Source: Macrostomum hystrix (Eukaryota > Animalia > Platyhelminthes). From it: a DNA stretch of 64,000 nucleotides. This document shows, piece by piece, positions 5,188 through 55,743 of the stretch. The notes under the pieces were generated by a model. That model did no database searches. It saw only the letters and a list, made by a program, of their open reading frames with translations, and was not told the origin of the DNA. The position numbers and the translations under genes are program-made. Numbering within the stretch: position 1 is the first letter of the stretch; each line of letters opens with the position of its first letter. The DNA is taken from contig CATNEN010000032.1 of NCBI GenBank assembly GCA_950097015.1, positions 1,736,001 to 1,800,000 of the forward strand, read 5' to 3'.

Positions 5188-5352
5188 TTTCGCTGAATTA
5201 ATATTTGCTAAATCTAAAATTTAACCAGCAGAGCCGGTTGCTGCACAGTTTATCACACACACAACTCACGCACACACTCTGAGACTGAGGCTCTGGGGTT
5301 GACGCCCTGGGATTCTGTCCTCGTCCGTCCTTCTGCGGATCCCACGAACCAG

Positions 5353-11300: not shown

Positions 11301-12101
11301 TGAGAAAGTCGCGACCCTCGCAAAGCGAAGCCTGGAAGCGCAGACCCGGAACCCACCCGATCCGAGCACTACTGGACAAATTCTGCGGCAGAATTTTGGT
11401 GGAGGCCACCGCGCAAGAGACTCAGGGATTTCCGGCAATCAATCGGGACCTTTTCATGGAGCAGGGTGAGAAGCTGAAGAAGCGCCATTATCTGAATTAA
11501 GAATCGCTCCAAGCTAAGAATCGCAGCACGTGATAGGAATCGCTCTGTAGTTTAATTATCCGTTATTCTCTCTTTACTCCTAGTAGCCAGGCAAAGGTGC
11601 GAAATGAGTTTCTCTGGTTGAGAATGATAAAAATACACAATAGCTGCTCGCAGATAGACAAATAGAAATTATGCCAAGCCCCAGTTGAGCCAGTTATAAA
11701 GCTAGCGGCGCTTCTACGGAGCTCCCCGTTAACCCGCACCCGCAGTCGGTCTGTGCGGCCTGGCTGGCTACGTGGCCGAGTTCGGGCAGGCCCGTTGGCG
11801 CCGCCCGGTGCTCGGCTGGCAGAGGGCCAACGGTTGCTACGGCGCCTTCCCCAACGAGCCGGTGGCCCAGGAGAATTTCAACCCGGAGCGCTACGGAAAT
11901 TATCGGAGGCGAAGGAAGCGATCCGAGGCGCTGATGGCCGGCGACGGCTGCCTGTCGCACCGAACGTCGGTGGCCCTGGATGCCCTCGTGGCCTTCATCC
12001 GGCAGCAGATTGAGAGCCTATTGAAGCTCCGGACTAAACTGAACGTCAACCGCGGAGAGGAGCATACAGCAGGCAGCAGCAGCGACTTTGAATTCATCTG
12101 A
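8332..12101 (+). CDS. C16orf89: UPF0764 / C16orf89 homologue, secreted protein, 6 exons: 8332-8548, 8986-9132, 9972-10170, 10334-10445, 11273-11465, 11746-12101
   Basis: Signal-peptide-like N-terminus; motifs LDAVERAVAF..NLDGGIGLR, FDEKFSDDC, YFLTHQVFY, RDLFMEQVGLCG, WQRANGCYG, RRKR..DGCLSHRT match the family as I recall it. All GT-AG junctions are phase-compatible and give one open frame. Confidence 0.85.
8556..8915. repeat. (GAGGA)n microsatellite in intron 1 of C16orf89
   Basis: Begins just after the G|gtaagc donor. Confidence 0.95.
9715..9890. repeat. 18-bp minisatellite (GGGGAGGTCAAAGGGATC)n, intron 2
   Basis: About 10 units. Confidence 0.9.
10500..11081. repeat. ~23-bp minisatellite (GTGGAGTGAGGTGGGTGTCGACA)n, intron 4
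   Basis: About 25 diverged units. Confidence 0.9.
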
Positions 12102-12725: not shown

Positions 12726-13007
12726 GTTAGTGGCGGCGATCATTATTCAAGGCTATACACGTGCATATTACACATGCGCATTGTTCTATGGCCTAAACTA
12801 GTCATTGCGTCATGATCATTGCGTACCGCTTATAAGTTTCTTCAGAGATTGGCCATAGACTATAATTAAGTTACAGTGTTTGGATGAAATAAAAACAGAA
12901 AAATTAGGGCGCGATTGACCATAGACTATTCGCTGCGTTGCATAAAAGCTCTATTATAAGTGACTGCTTTCTTACACTTCATTTTCTTAGTCAAGACTTA
13001 GTCAAAG

Positions 13008-13760
13008 ATGGCTTTGATTAACTGGAAAAATCTTCCATGTTTCTCTTTGGATGAAGTCAGCCGCAGCGAATTTGAATTGGTTTCTGCGCTAAGCTCTAAG
13101 GATCACGATGAAGACGACGAACTACTGAACTTTGTCAACTTTCTCACGGATCCCCAGGCCAACTCGGACGGTTATGTTAGCGGAGTTGAATTACCGAATG
13201 CACCAGAAGCTGTCGCTGCCGATATTGGACAAGGTTGAGATTGATTCGTACCACTGTCAACCCATCCGTGATCAAATGATTCAGCAAGGTGAACGGTTCG
13301 TAAACTTTAGGAACCATGAATATACGCAAGCATACGATTGAAGAAGTGCAAGGTATGGCAGAGGAGAAGCTGAGAGAGTATCTCCGTTATTAATACTTTG
13401 GATTTAAAGAAGGCTGATGGGAGTCCGTATGCAACAGCCACGCTAGTGTCTCTTGTCTTACGCGTTACCTTTCCGACAGTTGTCACAGCATGAACGAGAT
13501 TATGGCTGTCACAGGACAACAAAGTGAAGCTACTGTGCGCCGTTACCTGTCGCGCAAGCGAGATTAAGCATTGAGAAAAGTTGCAACTGCTGTCAGTACC
13601 AGTCTTCACCGTGACGTGGTGAATGTGACAAGCCCACCAGTTGAGAATGAACCTACGTTGGAACCATGCAACAGTTTAGAAGGCGGGTCAATTGTTATCG
13701 CATCAACCGGCAGTGGTATAATTACAGTGGCCGTTTCTCTAACGCAGCACACTATAAATT
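13008..13760 (+). pseudogene. Decayed, internally deleted Crypton-like tyrosine recombinase remnant
   Basis: Frameshifted pieces EEKLREYLRY / LKKADGSPYATATLVSL (Crypton N-terminal rKxDGxxY motif) and HSMNEIMAVTGQQSEATVRRY (YR C-terminal IMxxTGHxS..Y box); multiple stops; central catalytic part missing. Confidence 0.55.
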
Positions 13761-33503: not shown

Positions 33504-34208
33504 ATGACTCTCCAGTGGACAATTGTGGCTGGCTTCCTCTACTTAGAGGTGTTCGCTATTCTGGTTCTAATGCTTCCAGTGTTCAGCGTCCAGCGTTGGC
33601 GCCGAATCTTTCGCTCCCGCCTGCTCAGTCGGCTTGACGCTTGGGGCAATGTTTACTTCAACATGTTCTTAGGCTTGCTAGTCTTGGCCGTGCTAGACGG
33701 CTTTCGCAGCGCCAGAAAGCACTCTAACGAGGCTGACCTAGTCGAAGAGAAGGTCAATCCGCAGGGCCACGCACTGTGCCTCATGAGAATGTTCAGAGCA
33801 CAGCGGAATCTGTACGTAGCTGGCGGCGCCCTCATACTCTGGCTGGTGCTGAAGTGGATGGTCAAGGCCGTGACTCAGCGCGCCCTGACTGAGGCCAACC
33901 TTCTGGCTGCTCAGAGCCAGCTGGACAGCGCCACCAAGACGGCTGAGAAGCTGATGGAGGAGAACAGGAAGGCTTCCGGCGGCGGTGGTGGCGACGGAGA
34001 TGCCAAGGAGGAGATAAAGAAGCTGCGAGAGCGCCTGGCTGAGACTGACACCGAATTGCGCAAAACTCGCGCCAGCCTGGAGGCCATGACTTCTCAGGGC
34101 GCCTCTGCCGGCCGCGCCTACGACGAGCTAGTGAAGGAGAACGAGAAGCTGAATAGCCGAATCGCCAAGCTGGAGGGCCAGAAGACCGAAGATAAGAAGG
34201 ACGCTTAG
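33504..34208 (+). CDS. BCAP31: B-cell receptor-associated protein 31/29 (BAP31), intronless CDS, 234 aa
   Basis: MTLQWTIVAGFLYLE start, three hydrophobic helices, MRMFRAQRNLY motif, coiled coil, C-terminal KKDA dilysine ER-retrieval signal. Confidence 0.92.
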   Translation: MTLQWTIVAGFLYLEVFAILVLMLPVFSVQRWRRIFRSRLLSRLDAWGNVYFNMFLGLLVLAVLDGFRSARKHSNEADLVEEKVNPQGHALCLMRMFRAQRNLYVAGGALILWLVLKWMVKAVTQRALTEANLLAAQSQLDSATKTAEKLMEENRKASGGGGGDGDAKEEIKKLRERLAETDTELRKTRASLEAMTSQGASAGRAYDELVKENEKLNSRIAKLEGQKTEDKKDA

Positions 34209-36148: not shown

Positions 36149-39100
36149 TCACTCGTCGCCGACGTCCCCGCTGCTTCCACCGTTGCCTTCGTCGATGCCA
36201 CCGCCGCCGGCCTGCTGCTGGAAGCCGGTGCGGATGGCCCAGGCCGGGGTGCCTGGCGGCACCAGCCGGGAGCTGCGCGCCCCCACATCGCGCCGGCACT
36301 TCTCCAGCTGGACTCGCTGCTTGACCGTGGCGAAGCGGCGCAAAAAGTTGGTGTCTAGCGCGGCCTTGATCTCGCGCACCCGGTCTGACTCCCAGACCAG
36401 CTGCCGGACGCGCAGATTCTCAGATTCGTCTTCCTCATCTGAGGAGGTCATGTCGCGGGTCAGCACCAGGCGGTACTGATCGAGATCGTCCGGCGACAGG
36501 CCAGACAGGAGCGACTCAAACGCCTTCTGTCTGCGGCTCAGCTTCTGCAGGATGGCGAAGGATTGCGGCGAGCTGCTTACTTGATACTTCCAATATCTAC
36601 TCTCCACTCTGATCCCATTCTCCTCTGATCTATTACATTCTCCCGTGATCTATTACACTCTCCCATGATCTATTACATTCTTCCCTGATCTATTACATTC
36701 TCCCATGATCTATTACATTCTTCCCTGATCTATTACATTCTCCCATGATCTATTATATTCTTCCCTGATCTATTACACTCTCCCATGATCTATTACATTC
36801 TTCCCTGATCTATTATTACATTCTCCCTATGATCTATTAAATTCTATCCTGACCTATCCCATTCTATCCTGACCTATCCCATTCTCGCCTAATATATCAT
36901 ATTCTCAGACTCTCACCTACCCTATGCTTCCCCAATCTATATTTTTCTGCCAGATGTTTTGCTTCTAAATTATTAAATAAAGTAATTTTTATTTTTATAC
37001 GTCACATAATACTTCATCAAAGGCCACGCCTTTAAAAAGTTCATAAAAAAGGAAATTCTTAATCTCTATCGCTAATATAAGAAGTTGTTTCGGATTGAAA
37101 AAGCCCAGGTCAATGTAGAACAGTCTCCAATGTTCAGTTAGTAATCTTACACTGTTCCTTCGCAGATACTTCCTGGAATCCTTGCGCCAATTTAACAGCG
37201 TAGTGAAAACACACTTTCGCAGCTCGCCTTCGATCAAGTATCAAGGATTAAGCGGAAAAACATGTCGCGTTAATAACGCTATTCTTTCAACAGAAAAACT
37301 GAAGATTCTACACTTTCACTGAGATTGAAGTATGCCAGGTTGTTTTTTTGCCAATTCCGCTAAACAGAAGCACGGCTTAATCAAGCAGTATTCAAATGTT
37401 TAACTGAACACAAAGTGAAATACCTGTTTGAGCTTGTTGCACCTAGCAGCTGACCTGCGCCTAATGCCAATCCATTTGGTTTCGTTGATAAAATTGTAAC
37501 GACATGCGCCTAGCGTTAATTGTTTGGTTAAAAACACAATAGTGTGAACAATAATGCCGCTGTTCTGTTCTGCATTACACTGACATCTTAAGCCATTGTT
37601 CTAAACGAATTAATGAAGGCTGCAAGCTGCTGCTTTGACGCATTAGAAATTTAGTCTAAACTCAATCACATACCCCATTCCTGCGCTTATACTTTCGACT
37701 GTTGTTCACCCACGAGGCCAGCAGCTTCTTAGTTGAATAGTACAGATTGGAGGCCATGACTGGACAAGTTTTTTAGTAGAGACTGCTAATTAAAGTTCGC
37801 CCGAGAAAACACAATTTAGTTAAAGCATACCTGGCCGAGTGTGAAGGTCTACTTTCATTGCACTTACTCCAAACAGGAAATTGTAGCAAAGCTCAACGGT
37901 ATCGTTGTCTAGGTGGCCACTATTATCAATGGGTCACTCTCTTATCAGCTAGCTACTAATCATTAATGGGTCACTCTCTTATCAGCTAGCCACACATTAT
38001 CAATGGGTCACTCTCTTATCAGCTAGCCACTCATTATCAATGGGTCACTCTCTTATCAGCTAGCCACTCATTATCAATGGGTCACTCTCTTAAGAGGCTA
38101 GCCACTCATCATCAATGGGTCACTCTCTTATCAGCTAGCCACACATTATCAATGGGTCACTCTCTTATCAGCTAGCCACTCATTATCAATGGGTCACTCT
38201 CTTATCAGCTAGCCACACATAATCAATGGTTCACTCTCTTATCAGCTAGCCACTCATCATCAATGGGTCACTCTCTTATCAGCTAGCCACTCATCATCAA
38301 TGGGTCACTCTCTTATCAGCTAGCCACTCATCATCAATGGGTCACTCTCTTATCAGCTAGCCACTCATTATCAATGGGTCACTCTCTTATCAGCTAGCCA
38401 CACATTATCAATGGGTCACTCTCTTATCAGCTAGCCACTAATCATCAATGGGTCACTCTCTTATCAGCTAGCCACTCATCATCAATGGGTCACTCTCTTA
38501 TCAGCTAGCCACTCATCATCAATGGGTCACTCTCTTATCAGCTAGCCACTCATTATCAATGGGTCACTCTCTTATCAGCTAGCCACACATTATCAATGGG
38601 TCACTCTCTTATCAGCTAGCCACTAATCATCAATGGGTCACTCTCTTATCAGCTAGCCACTCATCATCAATGGGTCACTCTCTTATCAGCTAGCCACTCA
38701 TCATCAATGGGTCACTCTCTTATCAGCTAGCCACTCATCATCAATGGGTCACTCTCTTATCAGCTAGCCACTCATTATCAATGGGTCACTCTCTTATCAG
38801 CTAGCCACACATTATCAATGGGTCACTCTCTTATCAGCTAGCCACTCATCAGCAATGGGTCACTCTCTTATCAGCTAGCCGCTAATCATCAATGGGTCAC
38901 TCTCTTATCAGCTAGCCACTAATCAGCAATGGGTCACTCTCTTATCAGCTAGCCACTCATCATCAATGGGTCACTCTCTTATCAGCTAGCCACTCATCAG
39001 CAATGGGTCACTCTCTTATCAGCTAGCCGCTAATCATCAATGGGTCACTCTCTTATCAGCTAGCCACTAATCAGCAATGGGTCACTCTCTTATCAGCTAG

Positions 39101-40613
39101 CCACTCATCATCAATGGGTCACTCTCATACCAATAGGTTCCATTATGCATTAGCGGGTAATTTAGAGTTTCGAGAAAACTTAGATGGTTTAGTTGTGCAT
39201 CTTAGCTGTTTGGGATAAATAGTTGCAGTTAATTGGCTGATTATTTCATAATTGGCAGGTACATGGCGCTAACAGCGCGCAACCTTAACTGAGCACTGCT
39301 TATGCAAAGCAGCCGGTAATTGTTTTAGCAGACTTCAAACTCGAGCAGAAAGAAGAAAACAGTTTTGTTACACAAAAATACACCATGACCCTTGCTACAC
39401 TACTGACAGTAGGCGCACGGAACTATTTATTACCTTTCCAGGTGTCAGGATCGGCGGTGACACCTGAGGCAAGCTGAGCGTGATCGATGACACTCTGTGC
39501 CACAGCTTGATTGGCAGCGTGTTCCCAACTGGCAAATAAAATCACGGGACATCAGGATGATAGTTGAGAGTGCTCAATGCAGACAATTACTCATGTCAAA
39601 AATACTCACGGCTTAGAAAAGTCGAACAGATGAGGGCCATTTCCTCGAAGGTTTTTGTAAGTGTCTTTTAACAGATTCTGCAACAATGCGACAGGGTGCG
39701 TAGTAATTGGTGCAAAGCAGCCAACGAGATATGAGATATTTAACGATTCTGACAGTGGTCCCAGATTTTCCCAGAAGCGCTAATGCATTCAGTACACCCC
39801 TGTAAACAAATCAGCACTGATCCTCATCATCCTCATGATTCGCATTTCCTCAAATTCAAATTATCCAAGCTTCTAAGCGGGTCCCGACTGCCTGCAACTA
39901 ACCCGAATATCGGCACCACCGCACGTAGCAGCGGCGGCGGCGGCGGCGGCAGCGGCAGCGGCGGCAAGCTGCTCGTCGCTGTCAATCATAAGCGAGGAAG
40001 ATCGGGCGCCGCCATGACTCCTGGACTGCCGCTTAGACTGCTGCTGCTGCTGCTGAAAGTGGTGCTGCAGTGGCAAGGCACTGATGTCTAGGCCGGAGAA
40101 GTCGCCGCCGCTCTCATCCTCCAGAATCATGACGCATTCATCACCGCCGCCGCCCTCGTCGTACTGTTCGTCGAATTCGCCGCCACCAGGGCTGAATTTC
40201 TCCTCCTCCTCAGAGGCCAGAGCTTCCGAGACTATGGGCTCGGTTTTCAAATTCGAGCAGTGACGCTTGGCTGGCGGCGGCTCGACAGCCGCGGCGGCTG
40301 CGGCGGCCGACGAGGAAGCGGCTTCAACGTCGCGCAGCAGCATCAGCTGACGGTTGGCTTCGGCTAGCTGGAGCTTCAACTGGCAGGCGGACGGATGCAT
40401 GACGTCAACAAGCTGGTGCTGCAGGTTCTGCACCAACCGCATGGCGGCCAACAGATCGTCTAGCGGCATGCTGTCTAATAGCATGCCAGCGTTGAGCAGG
40501 GTGGACTCAAACAGGGTCAGAGCTGAGAAGCCGCCAGAGCCGGGGCCGCCAGGAAGGGAGGCGGACGGCAGCGCCTGACTGGCTGGGGAGGACTGAATGC
40601 ACGCGGCGGCCAT
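36149..40613 (-). CDS. Paralogue A, C14orf93-like C-terminal region: exons 40613-39903, 39677-39610, 39528-39434, [one cassette exon], 36544-36149
   Basis: Phase-compatible GT-AG junctions (0, 2, 1, then 0 at the last exon). LFESTLLNAGMLLDSM N-terminal domain; LLKDTYKNL..LFDFSKPW; last exon KLSRRQK..MTSSDEE..WES..LD..SSRLVP..PAWA is homologous to B and C. Confidence 0.78.
36615..36900. repeat. 20-bp minisatellite with alternating variants, last intron of paralogue A
   Basis: TGATCTATTACATTCTCCCA alternates with TGATCTATTACATTCTTCCC. Confidence 0.85.
37151..37227 (-). CDS. Paralogue A cassette exon A3 (77 nt): GELRKCVFTTLLNWRKDSRKYLRRNS
   Basis: gaag|GC...AGT|gtaaga; 3n+2; homologous to A1 (W..SRKY.RRN). 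Confidence 0.65.
37424..37509 (-). CDS. Paralogue A cassette exon A2 (86 nt): GACRYNFINETKWIGIRRRSAARCNKLKQ
   Basis: gctag|GC...CAG|gtattt; 3n+2; same length as A1. Confidence 0.55.
37674..37759 (-). CDS. Paralogue A cassette exon A1 (86 nt): VMASNLYYSTKKLLASWVNNSRKYKRRNG
   Basis: tccag|TC...GGG|gtatgt; 3n+2; open. Confidence 0.62.
37918..39125. repeat. 37-bp minisatellite (CAGCTAGCCACTCATCATCAATGGGTCACTCTCTTAT)n
   Basis: About 32 units, intronic in paralogue A. Confidence 0.95.
39250..39316 (-). promoter_or_regulatory. Candidate docking site of paralogue A
   Basis: 120-185 nt into the intron after exon 3; partial complementarity to 37818-37836, 37629-37637 and 37373-37394 upstream of A1, A2 and A3. 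Confidence 0.4.
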
Positions 40614-45034: not shown

Positions 45035-48000
45035 TTACCAAGAGCCTTCTCCACTGCCGGGCATCGATTGTTGCTGATTGGCAGCCGCGCCAGCAGCAGC
45101 AGCAGCAGCGGCGGCGGCCGGCGTCCAGATTGGGTCCCTGGCCCAGGGCACGCACTCTGGCGGCGGCGGCCGCTCCGACTGGCAGGCCGGGTGTCGCTGG
45201 AGGCGAAGGAGCTCGGCTCGCTGCCTCTCGTCGGCAAGGCGTTCGACGAACACGGAGTCCAGGCGCTGCTTCATCCGGCGCAGCTCGTCGCTCTCCCAGG
45301 ACAGGCAGCGAACTCTGGCGGCCTCGGTCGAGTCTAAGTCAGCGCCGGCCTCTTCATCCGAGCTGGTGTAGTCTCTAGTGAGCACACTCTGATAGCGAGC
45401 TCTGGTGGACTCGTCTAGGTCATCTTTGATTGCTTCAAAGCTTTTCTGTCGTCGGTTGAGCTTCTGTTTTGATGTGGCGAGGCGGCAAGTGAACAGAATT
45501 GTGAGTCAATGTTCAGCTGGAAAGATAGATGTCTCGAGAGTACTAGAAAAGGTAAGCATAAGCTATCAGAATGTCTGGGAGATACTAAAGCGACCAGAAT
45601 AGCTGGGAGAGAAATTGAAGCTACCAGAACATTTGGATGATAGATAATATAGAAAATCTAGCTCGTAGCTAATAGAATGTCTTGGAGACACTGAAGCTAC
45701 CAGAGTGTCTTGGAGAGACTGAAGCTACCAGAATGTCTTGGAGACACTGAAGATACCAGAGTGTCTGGGAGACACTGAAGCTACCAGAGTGTCTTGAAGA
45801 GACTGAAGCTACCAGAATGTCTTGGAGACACTGAAGCTACCAGAGCGTCTTGGAGACACTGAAGCTACCAGAATGTCTGGGAGACACTGAAGCTACCAGA
45901 ATGTCTGGGAGACACTGAAGCTACCTGATGTCTTGGAGATATTGAAGCTACCAGAATGTCTGGGAGACACTGAAGCTACCAGAATGTCTGGGAGACACTG
46001 AAGCTACCAGAATGTCTGGGAGACACTGAAGCTACCTGATGTCTTGGAGATATTGAAGCTACCAGAATGTCTGGGAGACACTGAAGCTACCAGAATGTCT
46101 GGGAGACACTGAAGCTACCAGAATGTCTGGGAGACACTGAAGCTACCTGATGTCTTGGAGATATTGAAGCTACCAGAATGTCTGGGAGACACTGAAGCTA
46201 CCAGAATGTCTGGGAGACACTGAAGCTACCAGAATGTCTGGGAGACACTGAAGCTACCAGAATGTCTGGGAGACACTGAAGCTACCAGAATGTCTGGGAG
46301 ACACTGAAGCTACCAGAATGTCTGGGAGACACTGAAGCTACCAGAATGTCTGGGAGACACTGAAGCTACCTGATGTCTTGGAGATATTGAAGCTACCAGA
46401 ATGTCTGGGAGACACTGAAGCTACCAGAATGTCTGGGAGACACTGAAGCTACCAGAATGTCTTGGAGATATTGAAGCTACCAGAATAATGTCTGGGAGAG
46501 AAATTGAAGCTAGTAGAATGTGTGGGGCAGCTCAAATGCCTGTCTGGGTGTCAGTGACCGCGTTACTCACAGTCTGAATGAGTATCATTGAGTTAAACTT
46601 ATTCTTTCTAGACTTGGCAACAAAGTCCCGTCTGAGACGCTGGGTGTACCAGTTGCGCAAGTACTTCACTGACAAAACTGAAAACGGTACAGTGACAGCC
46701 AATGGCAAGGCTAGCTAAACACGTCAATCTTACAATAAAATATTTCAGTTAATCACGATCGAGAGCGACGTTGCAGACCCATGGCGATAGTCTTAACCAA
46801 AGTGTAAGGCAACATTTTCTTTTTTTCTTCTTTGCTTTATTTTGTTATAAAGGCGGAATGCATTCGCGGAAGTGTCTGCTGATGGCGTGTGCTCATTGGG
46901 GTGGGTCTGTTGATGGCGTGTGCTCATTGGGGTGGGTCTGCTGATGGCGTGTGCTCATTGGGGTGGGTCTGTTGATGGCGGGTGTACATCGAGGTGGGAT
47001 CTGTTGATGGCGTGTGTACATCGAGGTGGGATCTGTTGATGGCGTGTGTACAGTGGGGTGGGATCTGTTGATGGCGGGTGTACATTGGGGAGGGATCTAT
47101 TGATGGCGGGTGTACAGTGGGGTGGGATCTGTTGATGGTGGGTGTACATTGGGGAGGGATCTGTTGATGGCGGGAGTACAGTGGGGTGGGATCTGTTGAT
47201 GGCGGGTGTACATCGGGGTGGGATCTGTTGATGGCGGGTGTTCATCGGGGTGGGATCTGTTGATGGCGGGTGTACATCTGGGAGGGATCTGTTGATGGCG
47301 GGTGTACATCGGGGTGGGATCTGTTGATGGCGGGTGTTCATCGGGGTGGGATCTGTTGATGGCGGGTGTACATTGGGGTGGGATCTGTTGATGGCGGGTG
47401 TTCATTGGGGTGGAGTCATTGGAAAGCAGGGTGTACACTCGGGTGGGTCTGTTGATGGCGGGTGTACATCTGGGAGGGATCTGTTGATGGCGGGTGTTCA
47501 TTCGGGTGGAGTCATTGGAAAGCAGGGTGTACACTCGGGTGGGTCTGTTGATGGCGGGTGTACATCTGGGAGGGATCTGTTGATGGCGGGTGTTCATTGG
47601 GGTGGGATCTGTTGATGGCGGGTGTTCATTGGGGTGGAGTCATTGGAAAGCAGGGTGTACACTCGGGTGGGTCTGTTGATGGCGGGTGTACATCTGGGAG
47701 GGATCTGTTGATGGCGGGTGTTCATTGGGGTGGAGTCATTGGAAAGCAGGGTGTACACTCGGGTGGGTCTGTTGATGGCGGGTGTACATTGGGGTGGATT
47801 CAGTTGAAGGCAGGGTTGTACACTGCGAATAATACATGTTTACATCAGAAATAAAGCACTCACGGACTGAACGAAAATCAATGAATTGAGCCTATTTTGT
47901 CTGGCTTTGGATTGGAAATCGCGCTTTAGATTTTGGCTGTACCAATTGCGCATGTACTTTCCAGCATTTGCTGAAACAAGTGTGACAAAATAATCTCTTC

Positions 48001-51000
48001 GCTGCTTGCCTGACTCTGTATGAGGTGGGCAGCTTTAAAAATAACAGTGTGCGGCCCATCGCAAAGGAGTTTTAAGCAAAAATAATGGTGTGCATTGAAA
48101 TTTCACCAGGTCAGAAGAAATGTAATTTAGGAATGATGAGCTTTTAGAACTAATAAATGAAGCTATATCGCTCAATGTTGGTGATTAAAGCCAGCCCTTA
48201 AGATGAGCTAGCGCTGAACTTTAAGTAGACTTACAAACTGGGCAGAGATCAGTGAGTTAATTTTAGTCTGCTTGGCTTTCGCATTGAATTCGCGTTTAAG
48301 ATACTGGCCGTAGTAGCGCACATACTTCATTGAGACTTCTGAAAGTAACATGCTTGAGTGCTACAAAAACTCCGCTATACATACATGGAGCCTGAGGGAC
48401 ACATCGCAAAAATGTTTAAACAGCTGGAAGCAAGTTTTTGTTTACTAACCGTGAGATTTAAAGTAGTTACACTAGAAATTCTTCTTTTTTAGGAATTATT
48501 TTTTAACTTTTGTACTTTTTAACTCCTGTGTGTGCACCTCTGTGTACAACTCCAATAGAGTGAGGATGAATACAGACTGAGTGTACATTTTCAGTGGAGT
48601 GAGGTTGGATGCAGACTGACTGTACACTTTCAGTGGAGTGAGGTTGGATGCAGACTGAGTGTACACTTTCAGTGGAGTGAGGTTGGATGCAGACTGAGTG
48701 TACACTTTCAGCAGAGTGAGGTTGGATGCAGACTGAGTGCACACTTTCAGTGGAGTGAGGTTGGATGCAGACTGAGTGTACACTTTCAGTGGAGTGAGGT
48801 TGGCTGCAGACTGAGTGTACACTTTCAGTGGAGTGAGGTTGGATGCAGACTGAGTGTACACTTTCAGTGGAGTGAGGTTGGATGCAGACTGAGTGTACAC
48901 TTTCAGTGGAGTGAGGTTGGATGCAGACTGAGTGTACACTTTCAGTGGAGTGAGGTTGGATGCAGACTGAGTGTACACTTTCAGTGGAGTGAGGTTGGCT
49001 GCAGACTGAGTGTACACTTTCAGCAGAGTGAGGTTGGATGCAGACTGAGTGTACACTTTTAGCAGAGTGAGGTTGGATGCAGACTGAGTGTACACTTTCA
49101 GTGGAGTGAGGTTGGATGCAGACTGAGTGTACACTTTTAGCAGAGTGAGGTTGGATGCAGACTGAGTGTACACTTTCAGTGGAGTGAGGTTTGCTGCAGA
49201 CTGAGTGTACACTTTCAGCAGAGTGAGGTTGGATGCAGACTGAGTGTACACTTTCAGTGGAGTGAGGTTTGCTGCAGACTGAGTGTACACTTTCAGCAGA
49301 GTGAGGTTGGATGCAGACTGAGTGTACACTTTTAGCAGAGTGAGGTTGGATGCAGACTGAGTGTACACTTTCAGTGGAGTGAGGTTTGCTGCAGACTGAG
49401 TGTACACTTTTAGCAGAGTGAGGTTGGCTGCAGACTGAGTGTACACTTTCTGTGGAGTGAGGTTGGCTGCAGACTGAGTGTACACTTTCAGTGGAGTGAG
49501 GTTGGCTGCAGACTGAGTGTACACTTTCAGTGGAGTGAGGTTGGATGCAGACTGAGTGTACACTTTCAGTGGAGTGAGGTTGGATGCAGACTGAGTGTAC
49601 ACTTTCAGTGGAGTGAGGTTGGATGCAGACTGAGTGTACACTTTCAGTGGAGTGAGGTTGGCTGCAGACTGAGTGTACACTTTCAGTGGAGTGAGGTTGG
49701 ATGCAGACTGAGTGTACACTTTCAGTGGAGTGAGGTTGGATGCAGACTGAGTGTACACTTTCTGTGGAGTGAGGTTGGCTGCAGACTGAGTGTACACTTT
49801 CAGTGGAGTGAGGTTGGATGCAGACTGAGTGTACACTTTTAGCAGAGTGAGGTTGGATGCAGACTGAGTGTACACTTTCTGTGGAGTGAGGTTGGATGCA
49901 GACTGAGTGTACACTTTCAGTGGAGTGAGGTTGGCTGCAGACTGAGTGTACACTTTCAGTGGAGTGAGGTTGGATCCAGACTGAGTGTACACTTTCAGCG
50001 GAGTGAATTGGAATACAGACTGAGTGCACATTTTTAATGGAGTGCCAATGTATCTGAATGGTATTAGAAGATAAGACGAGCTAGTACTCACAGTCTGTGT
50101 GATAATTAGAGAGTTCAGTTTAGTTCGCTTGGCCTTGTTATTAAAATCGCGCCTAAGATACTGGCGATACCAGCTGCGCAAATATTTAGCGCTATTAACT
50201 GAAAGCAAATAACTATAATTGAAATTTTTTCAAAAGAACCTCTATAATCTGAACGGCGCAGAGGAACTCATCGCAAAATATCAGTCACGATAATATCAGT
50301 AAGTACAGTAAGTGTGCATCTAGACTGAATGCTATTACGTCGTTGTGACAGTTCGTTAGAAATGCGTAATTTCGCGGCCTGGTGGAGACTGAGAATAGAG
50401 GGGTTAGTCTGGTTAATCTACACTGGGAGTGAGGGGGTTAGTCTGGCCGATGTACACTGGGAGTAAGGGGGTTAGTCTGGCTGATGTACACTGGGAGTAA
50501 GGGGGTTAGTCTGGCTGATGTACACTAGGAGTGAGGGGGTTAGTCTGGTTAATGTACACTGGGAGTGAGGGGGTTAGTCTGGCTGATGTACACTGGGAGT
50601 AAGGGGGTTAGTCTGGCTGATGTACACTGGGAGTAAGGGGGTTAGTCTGTCTGATGTACACAATGAGCGTGGGAGGTTAGTCTGGCTGATGTACACTGGG
50701 AGTAAGGGGGTTAGTCTGGCTGATGTACACAATGAGCGTGGGAGGTTAGTGTGACTGATGTACACTGGGAGTAAGGGGGTTAGTCTGGCTGATGTACACT
50801 ATGAGCGTGGGAGGTTAGTCTGGCTGATGTACACTATGAGCGTGGGAGGTTAGTCTGGCTGATGTACACTATGAGCGTGGGAGGTTAGTCTGGCTGATGT
50901 ACACTGGGAGTAAGGGGGTTAGTCTGGCTGATGTACACTGGGAGTAAGGGGGTTAGTCTGGCTGATGTACACTATGAGCGTGGGAGGTTAGTCTGGCTGA

Positions 51001-54000
51001 TGTACACTGGGAGTAAGGGGGTTAGTCTGGCTGATGTACACTGGGAGTAAGGGGGTTAGTCTGGCTGATGTACACTAGGAGTGAGGGGGTTAGTCTGGTT
51101 AATGTACACTGGGAGTGAGGGGGTTAGTCTGGCTGATGTACACTGGGAGTAAGGGGGTTAGTCTGGCTGATGTACACTAGGAGTGAGGGGGTTAGTCTGG
51201 TTAATGTACACTGGGAGTGAGGGGGTTAGTCTGGCTGATGTACACTGGGAGTAAGGGGGTTAGTCTGTCTGATGTACACTGGGAGTAAGGGGGTTAGTCT
51301 GGCTTGCTTAAGCGAATCTAGAACGCTCTCATCAGCGGTACAGCACTCACAGTCTGCAAGCTGATCAGTGAGGAAATCTTTGACTGATCGAATTTGGCTC
51401 TGAAGCTACGCTTTAGAAACTGGGTGTACCAGATCCGCAGATATTTAAATGAAGCAGCTAAAAATGGCAAGTTTTGCAGACGTTATTAAAAATAGGAGAA
51501 TAACGGACAAAAAACTTGAGAACTGCGCGGACGAGTTGCAAGGCCAAAGTAGAAAATGCCCCTACATTAACTTACAAGAGTGGCTGAAATGCTAAAGTTT
51601 GGCTTTAGCCGACGCAGATAAGGATAGCGCCAGTTTTTAGAATAGTGCGGCTTCAAATAGCGATGACAGGAGGCTAGAAAGTTGAGCAAAAGCATCATTT
51701 ATAGACTCAACTAGCAATAACACAGAGGGCTGGCCGGATAGCAAAGAGCAACTTTAATTCGGAGAATTTTTCTCCTTGGCAAGTGTGAACCCCAATGTCC
51801 TAGAATTACTAACCATTATTTTTGTAAACAATTTTGCACTATCAGATTTGTAAGACTTGCGCTTGTGATCTCGTTTTAACACGCTGTCAAAGTAGATTCT
51901 AAAGTAGAGCGTCATCATTCCTATGCAATTATTCAGATTAGAATGCAATGTGCAATTCATACTACTGCACAAAGTAGAGGTTCATTAAAACAAATGCAAG
52001 CTAGCAAAGGAGTTGCAGTGGCTTTCTCGCATTAACTCAAAACATTTCTTACTATGATTAACTAACAGCATACAAAGTAAGAAGTTATGAAAATATTGAT
52101 TCAAAATCCTTCGACTTCGTGTCCAACATTTGGTACTGGGGTTTAATTGGTTCTTGGATTTGGTACTGGTGCTTAATTGGTACTTAAATTTGGTACTGGG
52201 ATTTGATTATTGTGGTTCGCTACTAAGGTTATGTACCAATCCTTTTTTATTTGGTACTGGGGTTTAATTGGTTCTTGGATTTGGTACTGGTGCTTAATTG
52301 GTACTTAAATTTGGTACTGGGATTTGATTATTGTGGTTCGCTACTAAGGTTATGTACCAATCCTTTTTTATTTGGTACTGGGGTTTAATTGGTTCTTGGA
52401 TTTGGTACTGGTGCTAATTGGTACTTAAATTTGGTACTGGGATTTGATTATTGTGGTTCGCTACTAAGGTTATGTACCAATCCTTTTTTATTTGGTACTG
52501 GGGTTTAATTGGTTCTTGGATTTGGTACTGGTGCTAATTGGTACTTAAATTTGGTACTGGGATTTGATTATTGTGGTTCGCTACTAAGGTTATGTACCAA
52601 TCCTTTTTTATTTGGTACTGGGGTTTAATTTGTTCTTGGATTTGGTACTGGTGCTAATTGGTACTTAAATTTGGTACTGGGATTTGATTATTGTGGTTCG
52701 CTACTAAGGTTATGTACCAATCCTTTTTTATTTGGTACTGGGGTTTAATTTGTTCTTGGATTTGGTACTGGTGCTAATTGGTACTTAAATTTGGTACTGG
52801 GATTTGATTATTGTGGTTCGCTACTAAGGTTATGTACCAATCCTTTTTTATTTGGTACTGGGGTTTAATTGGTTCTTGAATTTGGTACTGGTGCTTAATT
52901 GGTACTTAAATTTGGTACTGGGATTTGATTATTGTGGTTCGCTACTAAGGTTCTGTACCAATCCTTTTTTATTTGGTACTGGGGTTTAATTTGTTCTTGG
53001 ATTTGGTACTGGTGCTAATTGGTACTTAAATTTGGTACTGGGATTTGATTATTGTGGTTCGCTACTAAGGTTATGTACCAATCCTTTTTTATTTGGTACT
53101 GGGGTTTAATTGGTTCTTGAATTTGGTACTGGTGCTTAATTGGTACTTAAATTTGGTACTGGGATTTGATTATTGTGGTTCGCTACTAAGGTTCTGTACC
53201 AATCCTTTTTATTTGGTACTGGGGTTTAATTGGTTCTTGGATTTGGTACTGGTGCTTAATTGGTACTTAAATTTGGTACTGGGATTTGATTATTGTGGTT
53301 CGCTACTAAGATTATGTACCAATCCTTTTTTATTTGGTACTGGGGTTTTGAAACTGGAGATTTTGGTACAAGGACATTGGTATTTGGTCTTGGTCTTGAT
53401 ACTAGGATTTAGTACAGGGAGAATCTTAGAGATTCGGTACAGTATGATTTTATTTTAGTACTCTGGTAATTAGATTTTGCACTATAATTTAGGTATACTA
53501 GGTCTCCGTTACAAGAAGGTTTCGGGTGCAGAATTTTAAATCTAGTGCTTAAAATCAGAAAAAATGAGTATGATAGCACAAGAGTAAACATACAGACAGG
53601 AATCTCTGATTTACCCGCATCTGCTGCAACAGTTTGGCATTGCCATCCTTGACAACTTTTAAGTTGTTATCTCGTTTTAATACGCTGTAGAAGTAAATCT
53701 TAAAGTAGCGATCCATCTTAGCTGATAATTTTAAGGATTTATTAGAAGATAGAAAAAAACTGCGTTTTAGCTATTTGCTGGCGGGTATGGCATTTCTAAG
53801 AGAGTCTGATTTCAGAGAGTGCTGCAGTGGCTATCATAAATGTCATCCATTTTTTGAAGCATAAACCACACACTTAAGAACAAAAGTCTAGAAAAGGATA
53901 GTTAATCGAGGCATGTGGTGAGCTTCTTACCAGATTACTGGTGACAATTCTGGCCATCCTAGCAGCATCCTCGAACTTTTTATTAGTAGGCTTCAGGGTG

Positions 54001-55743
54001 GACTTGTAGTAGATGCTCAGGTAGTGCTTCATGGCACTGTCTGTGCGCATAAGGCCGATAGTTTTGTCAAGCAACATGTCAAGGCACTCACAATGCGCCT
54101 AATATTCCACTAACTTCAGCCGCTTTCAGGCGAAATTGTGTCAAAAAGTCCTATTTTTTTCTATATAAATTTTAACAGAGCGAACACGCTAATTAGTTGA
54201 TTAAATATCATATTTGGCAGGTTTTCTCAGCTTTCAACCGCATCAGAAGGGCAGCTGAATGTCAGTTATGATCGCTCATTGATTTAAAAAAGCAGACTTA
54301 AAAAATTGGTATCGATAAACACAATAGAAATCCCGCCTGAAGCCACACTGAATTAAATAAATTTAAATTAAAGCTGCGAGCGATCAGCTAACCAACCGGT
54401 GCTTTATTAACTTTAACCTAGGCGAATGTGTAAAAACAATTTAGTGACATCTTTGCGATGGCCCTGCAACGCCCTCTGATAACAAATAACCTTAAATGAC
54501 TAATGAATAGTGCGACAATTAACTCCTCCTTTCGGAGGACTTTTCTGCTTTTATAAAATAGCAGATAATTGATCTTGAAAAATTGGGATTAAACTCACTG
54601 CGCCACGCTTCGACATTGGCTGGTCTCTGCCGGCCCAGCGACAGGGCCTTGTCAATCACCCTATTGGCTGCCAGAACGTTGGCTCTGGCTGAATACGGGA
54701 GGGCGAAGTCGAACACATTGCTCCCAGTTTCTTCTTTTAGCACCCGGTAGGCGCGTCGAAGGATTCCCTTCCATTCGTTGGACAGTTCGGAGGAGCTGCC
54801 TTCCTCGGCGCCGCCGCTGACGCCAGCACCAGAGGAGCGACCACCGGCGCCAGGCTGTCTGTTCGAGAACATGGACGAGTTTCCTGAGCCGGACTGGTCA
54901 AACATAATATCCGTCTCCATTAGAACGCAATCGTCGTCCGAGTCGTTTATTGTGGCCTCTAATTTCATAGCTGCCGCTGCTGACGATGCTGACGCCGAAG
55001 CGTTTGAGGACTGCTGCTGTTGGTGCTTTTCAGATTTCTCTGACTTAGAGGCCGGAGTGTGCTGGTGATGATCAGCGAAGGCCGGCGGAGGCGGTGGGCA
55101 CTTTAAATGAAACATGAAAGAGAGTCAGATCAGCTTAGCTTAGACGCAGTCAGATCACATTAGATAAGGAATCTAATCCCATTGGATAAGGAATCTAATC
55201 CCATTGGATAAGGAATCTAATACCATTTGATAAGGAATCTAATCCCATTGGATAAGGAATCTAATCCCATTAGATAAGGAGTCTAATCCCATTAGATAAG
55301 GAATCTAATCCCATTAGATAAGGAATCTAATCCCATTAGATAAGAAATATAATCCCATTAGATAAGGAATCTAATCCCATAAGATAAGGAATCTAATCCG
55401 ATTAGATAAGGAATCTAATCCCATTAGATAAGGAATCTAATCCCATTAGATAAGCAATCTAATCCCATTAGATAAGGAATCAGGTTCTACTCATCGAGCT
55501 CACCATGGCGTGCTCGTCAGCGACGCTCGCCAGTCGTTGCACGGCGGGATCCAGGACATCCATGAGGTGACCGTGCAGCTGAGCCACAATACGAAAGGCC
55601 ATGAGGAGATCTCTGACAGCCATATTGTCTATGAGCATAGTGGCACTGGAGATGGTGCACTCAAACATGGTCAGCGGTGAGAAGGTGCCGGCGCCGCTTG
55701 CAGACCCGAGCTGCGACGGCATGGAGAAAGCGGTGGACGCCAT
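45035..55743 (-). CDS. Paralogue B, C14orf93-like: exon 1 55743-55504, exon 2 55100-54599, [one of 9 cassette exons], last exon 45463-45035
   Basis: ATG|gtgagc to ttaaag|TGC (phase 0); exon 2 ends TGG CGC A|gtgagt (phase 1); last exon aaacag|AAG CTC AAC (phase 0) KLNRRQK..YTSSDEE..WES..LD..SERPPP..PWA; homologous to A and C. Confidence 0.85.
45680..46490. repeat. 28-bp minisatellite (CTGAAGCTACCAGAATGTCTGGGAGACA)n between B9 and the last exon
   Basis: Directly visible. Confidence 0.93.
46571..46677 (-). CDS. Cassette exon B9 (107 nt): ILSVKYLRNWYTQRLRRDFVAKSRKNKFNSMILIQT
   Basis: ttttcag|TT...ACT|gtgagt; 3n+2; homologous to B5-B8. Confidence 0.85.
46758..46790 (-). promoter_or_regulatory. 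Selector sequence for B9
   Basis: Plus strand ATCGAGAGCGACGTTGCAGACCCATGGCGATAG resembles the docking transcript ATCAGAGGGCGTTGCAGGGCCATCGCAAAG, so it is complementary to it in the pre-mRNA. Confidence 0.75.
46875..47810. repeat. 32-bp minisatellite between B8 and B9
   Basis: (GGGGTGGGATCTGTTGATGGCGGGTGTACATT)n with variants. Confidence 0.92.
47864..47970 (-). CDS. Cassette exon B8 (107 nt): TNAGKYMRNWYSQNLKRDFQSKARQNRLNSLIFVQS
   Basis: gtttcag|CA...TCC|gtgagt; 3n+2. Confidence 0.85.
48053..48066 (-). promoter_or_regulatory. Selector sequence for B8
   Basis: Plus strand GGCCCATCGCAAAG vs docking GGGCCATCGCAAAG. Confidence 0.7.
48235..48338 (-). CDS. Cassette exon B7 (104 nt): KVSMKYVRYYGQYLKREFNAKAKQTKINSLISAQF
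   Basis: ctttcag|AA...TTT|gtaagt; 3n+2. Confidence 0.85.
48392..48411 (-). promoter_or_regulatory. Selector sequence for B7
   Basis: Plus strand CTGAGGGACACATCGCAAAA matches both ends of the docking site. Confidence 0.65.
48560..50030. repeat. 39-bp minisatellite between B6 and B7
   Basis: About 37 units (GAGTGAGGTTGGATGCAGACTGAGTGTACACTTTCAGTG). Confidence 0.95.
50092..50198 (-). CDS. Cassette exon B6 (107 nt): INSAKYLRSWYRQYLRRDFNNKAKRTKLNSLIITQT
   Basis: gctttcag|TT...ACT|gtgagt; 3n+2. Confidence 0.85.
50259..50278 (-). promoter_or_regulatory. Selector sequence for B6
   Basis: Plus strand CAGAGGAACTCATCGCAAAA matches both ends of the docking site. Confidence 0.65.
50400..51302. repeat. 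34-bp minisatellite between B5 and B6
   Basis: (GGGGGTTAGTCTGGCTGATGTACACTGGGAGTAA)n with variants. Confidence 0.93.
51351..51457 (-). CDS. Cassette exon B5 (107 nt): TASFKYLRIWYTQFLKRSFRAKFDQSKISSLISLQT
   Basis: tttttag|CT...ACT|gtgagt; 3n+2. Confidence 0.85.
51535..51546 (-). promoter_or_regulatory. Selector sequence for B5
   Basis: Plus strand GTTGCAAGGCCA vs docking GTTGCAGGGCCA (12 bp with one G-U pair). Confidence 0.62.
51576..51673 (-). CDS. Cassette exon B4 (98 nt): TSCHRYLKPHYSKNWRYPYLRRLKPNFSISATL
   Basis: tttctag|CC...CTT|gtaagt; 3n+2; RYL..Y motif; more divergent. Confidence 0.65.
51723..51746 (-). promoter_or_regulatory. Selector sequence for B4
   Basis: Plus strand CAGAGGGC...ATAGCAAAG matches both ends of the docking site. 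Confidence 0.6.
51814..51920 (-). CDS. Cassette exon B3 (107 nt): RMMTLYFRIYFDSVLKRDHKRKSYKSDSAKLFTKIM
   Basis: tgcatag|GA...ATG|gttagt; 3n+2; close to B2. Confidence 0.8.
52012..52022 (-). promoter_or_regulatory. Selector sequence for B3 (short)
   Basis: Plus strand GTTGCAGTGGC vs docking GTTGCAGGGC. Confidence 0.45.
52125..53350. repeat. ~120-bp composite tandem repeat (about 10 units, internal TTTGGTACTGG subrepeats) between B2 and B3
   Basis: Sequence lines recur every 120 nt (52381, 52501, 52621, 52741). Confidence 0.93.
53615..53721 (-). CDS. Cassette exon B2 (107 nt): TKMDRYFKIYFYSVLKRDNNLKVVKDGNAKLLQQMR
   Basis: ttatcag|CT...CGG|gtaaat; 3n+2. Confidence 0.8.
53812..53840 (-). promoter_or_regulatory. 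Selector sequence for B2
   Basis: Plus strand TCAGAGAGTGCTGCAGTGGCTATCATAAA; in the pre-mRNA pairs along nearly the whole docking site (3 G-U, 3 mismatches, 1 bulge). Confidence 0.75.
53931..54040 (-). CDS. Cassette exon B1 (110 nt): NSAMKHYLSIYYKSTLKPTNKKFEDAARMARIVTSNL
   Basis: gcacag|AC...CTG|gtaaga; 3n+2; shares YL..YY/WY..TLKPT with the single exon of paralogue C. Confidence 0.82.
54451..54480 (-). promoter_or_regulatory. Docking site for mutually exclusive splicing of paralogue B (pre-mRNA AUCAGAGGGCGUUGCAGGGCCAUCGCAAAG)
   Basis: About 120 nt downstream of the exon 2 donor; complementary to sequences 50-120 nt upstream of B2-B9. Confidence 0.78.
55160..55480. repeat. 22-bp minisatellite in intron 1 of paralogue B (GATAAGGAATCTAATCCCATTA)n
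   Basis: About 14 units. Confidence 0.93.

What the first reader, a model, noticed from the sequence alone, without database searches (positions are those of the whole stretch)
36149..39434. Paralogue A has its own independent cassette array and a candidate docking site
Seen: after the phase-1 donor at 39434 there are three open 3n+2 exons (37759-37674, 37509-37424, 37227-37151) before the phase-0 last exon. A1 and A3 share W..SRKY.RRN and differ in sequence from the B cassettes. A possible fourth exon (37908-37868, 41 nt, DNDTVELCYNFLFG|gtaagt) has a weak acceptor. Intron segment 39250-39316 lies at a similar distance from the donor as B's docking site and partly complements 37818-37836, 37629-37637 and 37373-37394; its sequence is unrelated to B's. 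Inference: exon arrays and their RNA switches arose twice within one gene cluster.
Basis: partly seen in the sequence, partly recalled or inferred. Interest (0 to 1): 0.75.

Follow-up and report, generated by a model that had tools for sequence, protein, structure and literature searches.

The report
Three-way swappable exon with RNA switch

Summary
The three 3n+2 exons are real. A1 is 37759-37674, A2 is 37509-37424 and A3 is 37227-37151, all on the minus strand. All three are kept in the Macrostomum lignano orthologue (84-86% nucleotide identity). Nearly all changes are silent (pS about 0.6, pN 0-0.06), while the flanking introns are unalignable. Each conserved frame needs a direct join to the phase-1 donor at 39434, so only single inclusion keeps the frame. 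M. lignano gene models carry A1 alone or A3 alone.

The likely docking site is a 24-nt block at 39348-39325, identical in M. lignano. It pairs with a selector 69-88 nt upstream of each cassette in both genomes (-21 to -27 kcal/mol). Its sequence is unrelated to paralogue B's docking site and does not cross-pair with B's selectors.

"Arose twice" is only partly supported. A and B lie in different subfamilies, and two of A's close paralogues have a single cassette. But at least five paralogues carry arrays, and A2 resembles another paralogue's single exon.

The scan had already reported this kind of array in B (same window) and in a paralogue on another piece of this genome.

No reads could be laid.

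The parts
39903..40613 (-). Exon 1 of gene A (ATG at 40613, donor CGG|gttagt, ends in phase 0)
   Evidence: collinear with M. lignano protein P0001
39610..39677 (-). Exon 2 (68 nt; NLLKDTYKNLRGNGPHLFDFSKP)
   Evidence: blastn block 39679-39604 against L001
39434..39528 (-). Exon 3, the constitutive exon before the array; phase-1 donor AAAG|gtaata
39325..39348 (-). Docking-site candidate CUGCUCGAGUUUGAAGUCUGCUAA, starting at intron position +86. Pairing extends to 39353 for selector S3.
   Evidence: 24/24 identical to L001 11433-11456 in an otherwise unalignable intron. It is the top-scoring 30-nt window for pairing with all three upstream zones in both genomes. The repeat finder pair I8.
37916..39126 (-). 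Intronic 37-nt tandem repeat (about 33 copies) between the docking site and the first selector; absent from the M. lignano orthologue, so not part of the switch
37829..37854 (-). Selector S1 (AAGUAGACCUUCACACUCGGCCAGGU), 69 nt upstream of the A1 acceptor
   Evidence: duplex of -25.7 kcal/mol with the docking site; counterpart at L001 11578-11605
37674..37759 (-). Cassette A1, 86 nt (V)MASNLYYSTKKLLASWVNNSRKYKRRNG
   Evidence: 12 nucleotide differences from M. lignano and 0 amino-acid changes; the only cassette in the M. lignano model PAA53999.1
37598..37624 (-). Selector S2 (UGCAGCCUUCAUUAAUUCGUUUAGAAC), 88 nt upstream of the A2 acceptor
   Evidence: duplex of -20.8 kcal/mol; counterpart at L001 12986-13013 pairs at -27.3 kcal/mol, and is the best site in a 1.3-kb intron
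37424..37509 (-). Cassette A2, 86 nt (G)ACRYNFINETKWIGIRRRSAARCNKLKQ
   Evidence: 14 nucleotide differences and 2 amino-acid changes, pN 0.06 against pS 0.59; resembles the single exon of paralogue P0006
37312..37338 (-). Selector S3 (CUGGCAUACUUCAAUCUCAGUGAAAGU), 84 nt upstream of the A3 acceptor
   Evidence: duplex of -24.9 to -26.3 kcal/mol; its core 37335-37321 is the only other conserved intronic word of 15 nt or more shared with L001 (13238-13252); the repeat finder I8
37151..37227 (-). Cassette A3, 77 nt (G)ELRKCVFTTLLNWRKDSRKYLRRNS
   Evidence: 11 nucleotide differences, all silent; the only cassette in the M. lignano model A0A1I8IGX9
36149..36544 (-). Last exon (phase 0; KLSRRQKAFESLL ... 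stop), with a strong pyrimidine tract before its acceptor
37868..37908 (-).
   Evidence: not conserved, unlike the cassettes, poor acceptor at the edge of the tandem repeat
39250..39316 (-).
   Evidence: no counterpart in L001; loose pairings at inconsistent positions; energy rank 1.4%

Best explanation
Gene A is an uncharacterised, Macrostomum-expanded gene on the minus strand at 40613-36149. It holds a cluster of three mutually exclusive exons, A1, A2 and A3.

Each cassette encodes the basic middle stretch of one long alpha-helix in the conserved C-terminal domain. Exactly one cassette must be spliced between the phase-1 donor at 39434 and the phase-0 last exon for the protein to stay in frame.

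The choice is most likely made by competing RNA pairing, as in the Dscam exon 6 cluster. A 24-nt docking site (39348-39325) lies 86 nt into the intron after exon 3. It can pair with only one of three selector sequences at a time. Each selector lies 69-88 nt upstream of a cassette acceptor. Pairing loops out the cassettes in between and brings the chosen weak 3' splice site next to the exon 3 donor. The cassette's donor then joins the strong acceptor of the last exon.

Shown here: the exons, their selective constraint, the frame logic, conservation of the docking site, and complementarity to all three selectors in two genomes.

Inferred, not shown: that the pairing forms in vivo and controls the choice; how downstream cassettes are kept silent; and what the three helix versions do.
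For: 1. Exon anatomy and phases were read from the sequence.
2. In the M. lignano orthologue locus L001, only the exons are alignable, and that includes all three cassettes, with block edges within 2-7 nt of the exon ends. Cassette pS is 0.58-0.66 and pN is 0-0.06, while flanking introns are 23-32% identical, which is random.
3. The conserved frame of every cassette is the phase-1 frame, which exists only directly after exon 3. Double inclusion runs into TGA in the third codon of the last exon (read from the sequence).
4. The M. lignano model PAA53999.1 reads E3-A1-last. The GenBank annotation of that assembly comes from an RNA-seq-based StringTie/TACO transcriptome (PMC5730564). Model A0A1I8IGX9 reads E3-A3-last.
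5. An unbiased search for shared words of 11 nt or more in the roughly 2.9-kb intron found one 24-mer (the docking site) and one 15-mer (the S3 core). These two are complementary at 13 of 15 positions.
6. In a 30-nt sliding scan, the docking block is the best window in both genomes. In L001 it scores -75.3 kcal/mol against -42.2 for the next window. 0.4-0.8% of natural control 30-mers score as well.
7. The selectors sit at matching offsets in both genomes: 69, 88 and 84 nt in the window, and about 70, 76 and 82 nt in L001. This holds even though the A1-A2 intron is 164 nt in one genome and 1328 nt in the other. All selectors use the same docking nucleotides (alignment).
8. In the fold of L001:11420-11615, the docking:S1 stem closes both the MFE and the centroid structure. 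The z-score is -3.6, and 0 of 200 shuffles fold as stably.
9. As a positive control, the same scan recovers B's docking site at 54474-54445.
10. In the AF2 model of P0001, the cassette (residues 288-316) lies inside helix 283-331, where the 10-residue block-mean pLDDT is 87-97.
Against:
- No isoform containing A2 was seen in any database protein.
- Only two genomes were compared, and the docking core is invariant, so no two-sided compensatory change supports any core base pair.
- In the window itself the energy signal is modest. It is in the top 0.8% of controls, two non-conserved neighbouring windows reach 1.4%, and S2 pairs at only -20.8 kcal/mol.
- The duplexes are weaker than B's, which are -32 to -35 kcal/mol.
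- The A3-only model is a database gene prediction whose RNA support I could not check.
Confidence: 0.62

Rival explanations
1. The three exons are mutually exclusive, but the choice is set by proteins, weak splice sites and reading-frame surveillance. The conserved 24-mer would be a protein-binding splicing element, and its complementarity to the selectors would have no function.
For: No in vivo structure data and no compensatory changes. The cassette acceptors have poor pyrimidine tracts while the last exon has a strong one, which could bias splicing by itself. The energy rank in the window is only about 1%.
Against: The two longest conserved intronic words are complementary to each other. 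All three selectors hit the same docking bases at the same offset in two genomes. The docking:S1 stem dominates the local fold in M. lignano. Four sister paralogues show the same layout.
Confidence: 0.2
2. The reader's segment 39250-39316 is the functional docking site, or a second, species-specific one.
For: Window 39295-39266 reaches -68.6 kcal/mol summed over the three upstream zones, which is in the top 1.4% of controls. It pairs at -25.7 kcal/mol with 37642-37611, next to S2.
Against: It has no counterpart in M. lignano. Its partners lie 23, 101 and 2 nt from the acceptors, and the pairings have long internal loops. The segment is GC-rich and self-complementary (read from the sequence), which may raise duplex scores in general.
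Confidence: 0.06
3. Only A1, and perhaps A3, is used. A2 is a decaying duplicate or a rarely used poison exon.
For: No database protein carries A2 in this gene. A2 has the weakest selector pairing in the window and the poorest pyrimidine tract.
Against: A2 has pN 0.06 against pS 0.59, with open frame and intact splice sites in both genomes. Its selector is the strongest of the three in M. lignano, at -27.3 kcal/mol.
Confidence: 0.07

Closest known systems
Drosophila Dscam1 exon 6 cluster (docking site / selector sequences; competing RNA secondary structures)
   Same: - One conserved docking site in the intron just downstream of the constitutive exon.
- One selector upstream of every variable exon.
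- All selectors complementary to overlapping docking bases, so only one pairing can form.
- The docking site is the most conserved intronic element.
- Cassettes of similar length in the same phase.
The principle is described in PMC6071210 and PMC4691838.
   Different: - Three cassettes rather than 48.
- A flatworm, and an unrelated gene of unknown function.
- Duplexes of about 20 bp with bulges, at -21 to -27 kcal/mol.
- No known repressor (such as hrp36) or locus control region.
- Nothing has been tested experimentally.
Drosophila 14-3-3 xi, srp and MRP1 small clusters of mutually exclusive exons with competing pairings
   Same: Small arrays of 2-8 exons in ordinary genes that use intronic docking/selector competition (from my knowledge of the field; PMC4691838 and PMC6071210 were listed).
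   Different: In several of those clusters the docking site lies downstream of the array or pairing is bidirectional; here it lies upstream. All of them are arthropod genes.
Paralogue B in this window (45035-55743), and the 7 x 77-nt paralogue reported earlier by this scan
   Same: - Same gene family and the same exon position and phases.
- Same layout, with the docking site 69-125 nt after the donor and selectors before each cassette.
- B's docking site is also conserved in M. lignano, 28 of 30 positions.
   Different: - A has 3 cassettes of 86/86/77 nt; B has at least 7 of about 107 nt.
- The docking sequences are unrelated: local alignment is at background and cross-pairing is at background.
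- A lies in a different subfamily from B.
Ivanov and Pervouchine duplication model for the birth of competing structures (PMC6071210)
   Same: Selector plus exon looks like the duplicated unit, because the selector keeps a fixed offset of about 70-90 nt from each acceptor. A single docking arm lies outside the array.
   Different: - No ancestral stem-loop was found in the single-cassette paralogue P0003. Its best pairing was -21.8 kcal/mol and fell within an intronic repeat.
- The corresponding intron in P0006 is only 83 nt long.
- A2 is not recognisably similar to A1 or A3.

Membership tests
Docking-site/selector (competing RNA structure) mutually exclusive exon cluster | Tandem array of homologous exons of similar length, all in the same phase, between two constitutive exons | tested here: met
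   The cassettes are 86, 86 and 77 nt, all 3n+2, entered in phase 1 and followed by a phase-0 exon. A1 and A3 score 48 against a 99% null of 31; A2 is of a different type but the same length and position.
Docking-site/selector (competing RNA structure) mutually exclusive exon cluster | Exactly one cassette is present in the mature mRNA | tested here: inconclusive
   The frame logic and the silent-only divergence require each cassette to follow exon 3 directly. M. lignano models carry A1 only or A3 only.
Docking-site/selector (competing RNA structure) mutually exclusive exon cluster | A single docking site next to the constitutive exon, conserved between species | tested here: met
   The 24-mer 39348-39325 is identical to L001 11433-11456, at a synonymous divergence of about 0.6.
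Docking-site/selector (competing RNA structure) mutually exclusive exon cluster | A selector before every cassette, complementary to overlapping parts of the docking site | tested here: met
   There are six duplexes, three per genome, of -20.8 to -27.3 kcal/mol. All use docking bases 39346-39327, and the selectors lie 69-88 nt from the acceptors in the window.
Docking-site/selector (competing RNA structure) mutually exclusive exon cluster | Compensatory covariation in the duplexes | tested here: inconclusive
   The docking core is invariant. Selector changes are mostly one-sided and keep the pairing (G-C to G-U at 39340 for S2). Only the species-specific flanks differ on both sides, and they pair with different selectors. 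Two genomes are too few.
Docking-site/selector (competing RNA structure) mutually exclusive exon cluster | Disrupting the pairing changes the choice, and restoring it rescues the choice | not testable with these tools
   Needs minigenes or transgenic worms.
C14orf93 / DUF4616-like protein family (protein identity of gene A) | Significant match to the Pfam model | tested here: not met
   hmmscan of the window's exons and of P0001, P0006, P0007 and P0010 gave no family hit at E up to 1 other than noise.
C14orf93 / DUF4616-like protein family (protein identity of gene A) | Shared fold of the C-terminal domain | tested here: inconclusive
   The Atlas search lists DUF8263 and DUF4616 clusters at feature score 0.90-0.93 and TM 0.51-0.52; these are leads only. 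Foldseek against PDB found nothing at E of 0.001 or better.

The most novel reading that the evidence does not exclude
A Macrostomum-expanded gene family has repeatedly built, or repeatedly re-coded, docking/selector splicing switches.

At least five paralogues (A, B, P0004-like, P0007-like, P0010-like) carry arrays at the same exon position. Each has its own docking sequence 69-125 nt after the same donor, except the P0004-like candidate, which lies 865 nt downstream.

A and B are adjacent, and one database model fuses them. Their codes do not cross-pair, which would prevent cross-talk if the two genes share one precursor RNA.

If this holds, these would be the first multi-way docking/selector clusters outside arthropods. 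They would also be a natural series for testing how competing RNA structures are born and diverge.
Probability: 0.4. Interest if true: 0.78.

Novelty: new member of a known kind. Interest (0 to 1): 0.6.

Why it matters
Docking/selector control of mutually exclusive splicing is well documented mainly in arthropod genes. My literature searches found no flatworm case.

Gene A adds a small, tractable three-way cluster with a perfectly conserved 24-nt docking site. It sits next to a nine-way sister cluster that uses a different, non-cross-pairing code. Close paralogues have only one cassette.

That combination gives the before and after states needed to test models of how tandem exon duplication creates competing RNA structures (PMC6071210). 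The relative M. lignano also has working transgenesis (PMC5730564).

The swapped piece is the basic core of a long helix in a domain of unknown function. The isoforms therefore probably differ in a binding surface.

Tried and rejected
Stored M. lignano proteins were used instead.
- The word-index protein search with the last exon found nothing, because of its length window. With P0001 it returned only M. lignano proteins, so no third species was available.
- Pfam gave no family. Foldseek against PDB gave no hit. Rfam gave nothing above the gathering score.
- RNAduplex with a 67-nt docking segment against whole introns gives long, loose, inflated duplexes, so I dropped it in favour of 30-nt windows.
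- The docking sites of the paralogues were compared. A matches none of them. B, P0004 and P0007 share only an 8-10-nt TTGCAG(A)GG core, at p of about 0.03 against a repeat-inflated null. This is too weak to call homology.
- I looked for a pre-existing stem-loop in the single-cassette paralogue P0003 and found nothing convincing.
- A cassette phylogeny was not attempted beyond pairwise scores, because 25-36 residues are too few.
Full report
**What is there**

On the minus strand, gene A runs from the ATG at 40613 to the stop at 36149.
- Exon 1 is 40613-39903, exon 2 is 39677-39610 and exon 3 is 39528-39434. Exon 3 ends one base into a codon (AAAG|gtaata).
- The last exon, 36544-36149, begins in phase 0.
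- All three are AG/GT-bounded, 3n+2 and open in the phase-1 frame.
- A 1.2-kb array of 37-nt repeats (37916-39126) fills most of the intron before A1.
- Notes from this scan identify the genome as a Macrostomum flatworm. They had already reported the neighbouring paralogue B (nine cassettes) and a 7 x 77-nt paralogue elsewhere.

**Are the cassettes real?**

A full HMMER search with the last exon found a 449-aa M. lignano protein, P0001 (PAA53999.1), 83% identical over that exon. Its sequence reads ...EPDTWK-[A1 peptide]-KLSRRQKAF.... I fetched its genomic locus as L001.

blastn between gene A and L001 aligns only exons. The aligned blocks include all three cassettes, and their edges fall within 2-7 nt of the exon ends.
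- The M. lignano cassettes have the same lengths and splice sites.
- A1 differs at 12 of 86 nt and A3 at 11 of 77 nt, with no amino-acid change. A2 differs at 14 of 86 nt, with two amino-acid changes.
- pS is 0.58-0.66 and pN is 0-0.06. The 60 nt on either side of each cassette are 23-32% identical, which is random.

All three are therefore translated in the stated frame. That frame exists only if the cassette directly follows exon 3. After one cassette the phase is 0, after two it is 2, and a two-cassette mRNA hits TGA in the third codon of the last exon. Single inclusion is the only productive outcome.

Database models agree.
- PAA53999.1 carries A1 alone. The GenBank annotation of that assembly was derived from an RNA-seq-based StringTie/TACO transcriptome (PMC5730564).
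- UniProt A0A1I8IGX9 is a fused B+A prediction and carries A3 alone.
- I found no model with A2.

The 41-nt fourth exon (37908-37868) has a poor acceptor at the edge of the repeat, does not resemble the cassettes and has no M. lignano counterpart. I reject it.

**The docking site**

- Its named partners are a 9-bp match of the kind chance supplies, plus two loose pairings.
- Its best duplexes land 23, 101 and 2 nt from the three acceptors.

Reading the M. lignano intron revealed a different element. CTGCTCGAGTTTGAAGTCTGCTAA sits at window 39348-39325 and L001 11433-11456, identical at 24 of 24 positions, and is unique in the window.

An unbiased search for shared exact words of 11 nt or more across the whole exon 3 to last-exon intron gave only two non-trivial intronic hits.
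- The first is this 24-mer.
- The second is the 15-mer GCATACTTCAATCTC, at 37335-37321 and L001 13238-13252.
- The two are complementary at 13 of 15 positions. The repeat finder reports the same pair in both genomes (I8 in the window, I1 in L001).

The docking block pairs with a site upstream of each cassette.
- S1 is 37854-37829 (-25.7 kcal/mol).
- S2 is 37624-37598 (-20.8 kcal/mol).
- S3 is 37338-37312 (-24.9 to -26.3 kcal/mol).
- These lie 69, 88 and 84 nt before the acceptors.

M. lignano has the equivalents.
- They are at 11578-11605 (-24.7), 12986-13013 (-27.3) and 13238-13258 (about -24 kcal/mol).
- They lie about 70-82 nt before the acceptors, even though its A1-A2 intron is 1328 nt rather than 164 nt.

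All six selectors use the same docking bases, 39346-39327. Aligned with the reverse complement of the docking site, they share the core GCAGACTTCAAACTCG.

**How strong is the pairing evidence?**

I ran a sliding 30-nt scan of the intron after exon 3 against the 150 nt before each cassette.
- The conserved block ranks first in both genomes.
- In L001 it scores -75.3 kcal/mol against -42.2 for the next window (intron mean -32.5, sd 10.9).
- In the window it scores -71.4, but two other windows reach -68.6 and -68.1.
- Against random natural 30-mers, 0.5-0.8% do as well in the window and 0.4% in L001.

Thermodynamics alone is therefore suggestive. Conservation, the fixed offsets and the shared docking bases carry the argument.

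Two further checks support it.
- Folding L001:11420-11615 puts the docking:S1 stem at the base of both the MFE and the centroid structure, with z = -3.6 and 0 of 200 shuffles as stable.
- As a positive control, the same scan picks out B's docking site at 54474-54445 (-215.7 over seven cassettes, next window -141.7). That site is also conserved in M. lignano at 28 of 30 positions.

There are no two-sided compensatory changes in the core, because the docking site does not vary.

**Likely mechanism**

The layout is that of the Dscam exon 6 cluster.
- One docking site follows the constitutive donor, and one selector precedes each variant.
- Only one pairing is possible at a time.
- The pairing loops out upstream cassettes and brings one weak 3' splice site to the donor. 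The cassette acceptors have poor pyrimidine tracts, while the last exon has a good one.
- The reading frame penalises zero or double inclusion.

How downstream cassettes are silenced after a choice is unknown.

At the protein level, an AlphaFold model of P0001 was built with 16 family members. It places the cassette (residues 288-316) inside a 49-residue helix (283-331) of a confidently modelled C-terminal domain. Each cassette has 7-8 Lys or Arg residues, and A3 is three residues shorter. The isoforms therefore differ in a basic helical surface.

No Pfam family matches and no PDB fold matches. The Atlas search points weakly to DUF8263 and DUF4616, which fits the scan's earlier "C14orf93-like" label but does not prove it.

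**Did arrays and switches arise twice?**

A's docking sequence is unlike B's and unlike the docking candidates of three other paralogues. Cross-pairing is at background level.
- A's docking site against B's zones: -12.7 to -20.5 kcal/mol.
- B's docking site against A's zones: -16.5 to -19.1 kcal/mol.
- Single-zone control: mean -14.7, sd 4.3.

I built a tree of 17 family proteins with the cassette columns removed.
- A falls in a clade with P0002, P0003 and P0006 (support 100/99).
- B falls in another clade with P0075 (95/90) and then P0017 (88/86); P0030 joins on a weaker branch (80/72).

The loci of P0003 and P0006 hold a single cassette. B, P0075 and P0017 all hold B-type arrays. This favours separate expansion in A.

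Three things complicate that picture.
- Arrays with outstanding docking candidates also exist in the P0007 locus (5 or more cassettes; docking at L005 4368-4397) and the P0010 locus (5 or more 77-nt cassettes; docking at L006 5274-5303). The P0004 locus probably has two cassettes. "Twice" is therefore an undercount of arrays, whatever the number of origins.
- A2 is not detectably similar to A1 or A3, yet it scores 61 against P0006's single exon. A3 scores 38 against the second P0004 cassette, with the same 77-nt length and the same register. Either A2 kept the ancestral sequence while A1 and A3 diverged fast, or an older array was lost in A's closest paralogues.
- The B-type/A-type tandem gene pair is itself duplicated: P0075 sits just upstream of a P0003-like gene.

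I score the inference as partly supported.

**Verdict**

The exon observation is right. The docking observation is right in kind but misplaced. The evolutionary inference remains open. This is a new member of a known kind of splicing switch, in a phylum where I found no published case. The scan had already found sister arrays in this genome.

Noticed in passing
L005:4299-7403 (M. lignano NIVC01000420.1, gene of P0007): Another paralogue with at least five phase-compatible basic cassettes (acceptors near 5337, 5559, 5831, 6597 and 6796). A stand-out docking candidate lies at 4368-4397, 69 nt after the donor: summed pairing of -136.7 kcal/mol against an intron mean of -67.9, sd 19.5.
   Followed up: partly
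L006:5205-10226 and L004:5194-7883: The P0010 locus has at least five 77-nt cassettes and a docking candidate at 5274-5303. The P0004 locus has a 95-nt cassette and a possible 77-nt cassette. The docking candidates of B, P0004 and P0007 share a short TTGCAG(A)GG core, which may hint at common descent of those three switches.
   Followed up: partly
L007 (M. lignano NIVC01000681.1) and L001:1681-7927: The tandem gene pair (B-type upstream, A-type downstream) occurs twice in M. lignano: B/A on NIVC01002989.1, and P0075 with a P0003-like gene on NIVC01000681.1. UniProt A0A1I8IGX9 fuses B, A and a downstream gene into one model, so B and A may share a precursor transcript, or the model may simply be over-merged.
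   Followed up: no
window 37916-39126 (-): The 37-nt intronic tandem repeat carries UGAUGA and CUGA motifs. These give many sub-threshold hits to archaeal C/D-box sRNA models (about 20 bits, against gathering scores of 40-60). This is most likely chance. The repeat is absent from the M. lignano orthologue.
   Followed up: partly
window 33504-34208 (+): An intronless ORF of 234 aa with clear Bap31/Bap29 transmembrane and coiled-coil domains (Pfam E = 3e-32), convergent with the 3' end of gene A.
   Followed up: partly
P0060, P0061, P0063 (M. lignano): Three database models end with A1 followed by read-through into the next intron (..KRRNG-VRATSFLL-stop). This suggests that transcripts retaining the intron after A1 were assembled; they could be splicing intermediates or a truncated isoform.
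   Followed up: no
window 39419-39395 and L001 11272-11287 / 11365-11380: Both species have short CCTACT..AGTAGG palindromes in the intron between the exon 3 donor and the docking site. In the window, 39419-39410 also matches the A2 acceptor region 37512-37503 over 10 bp. Function, if any, is unknown.
   Followed up: no
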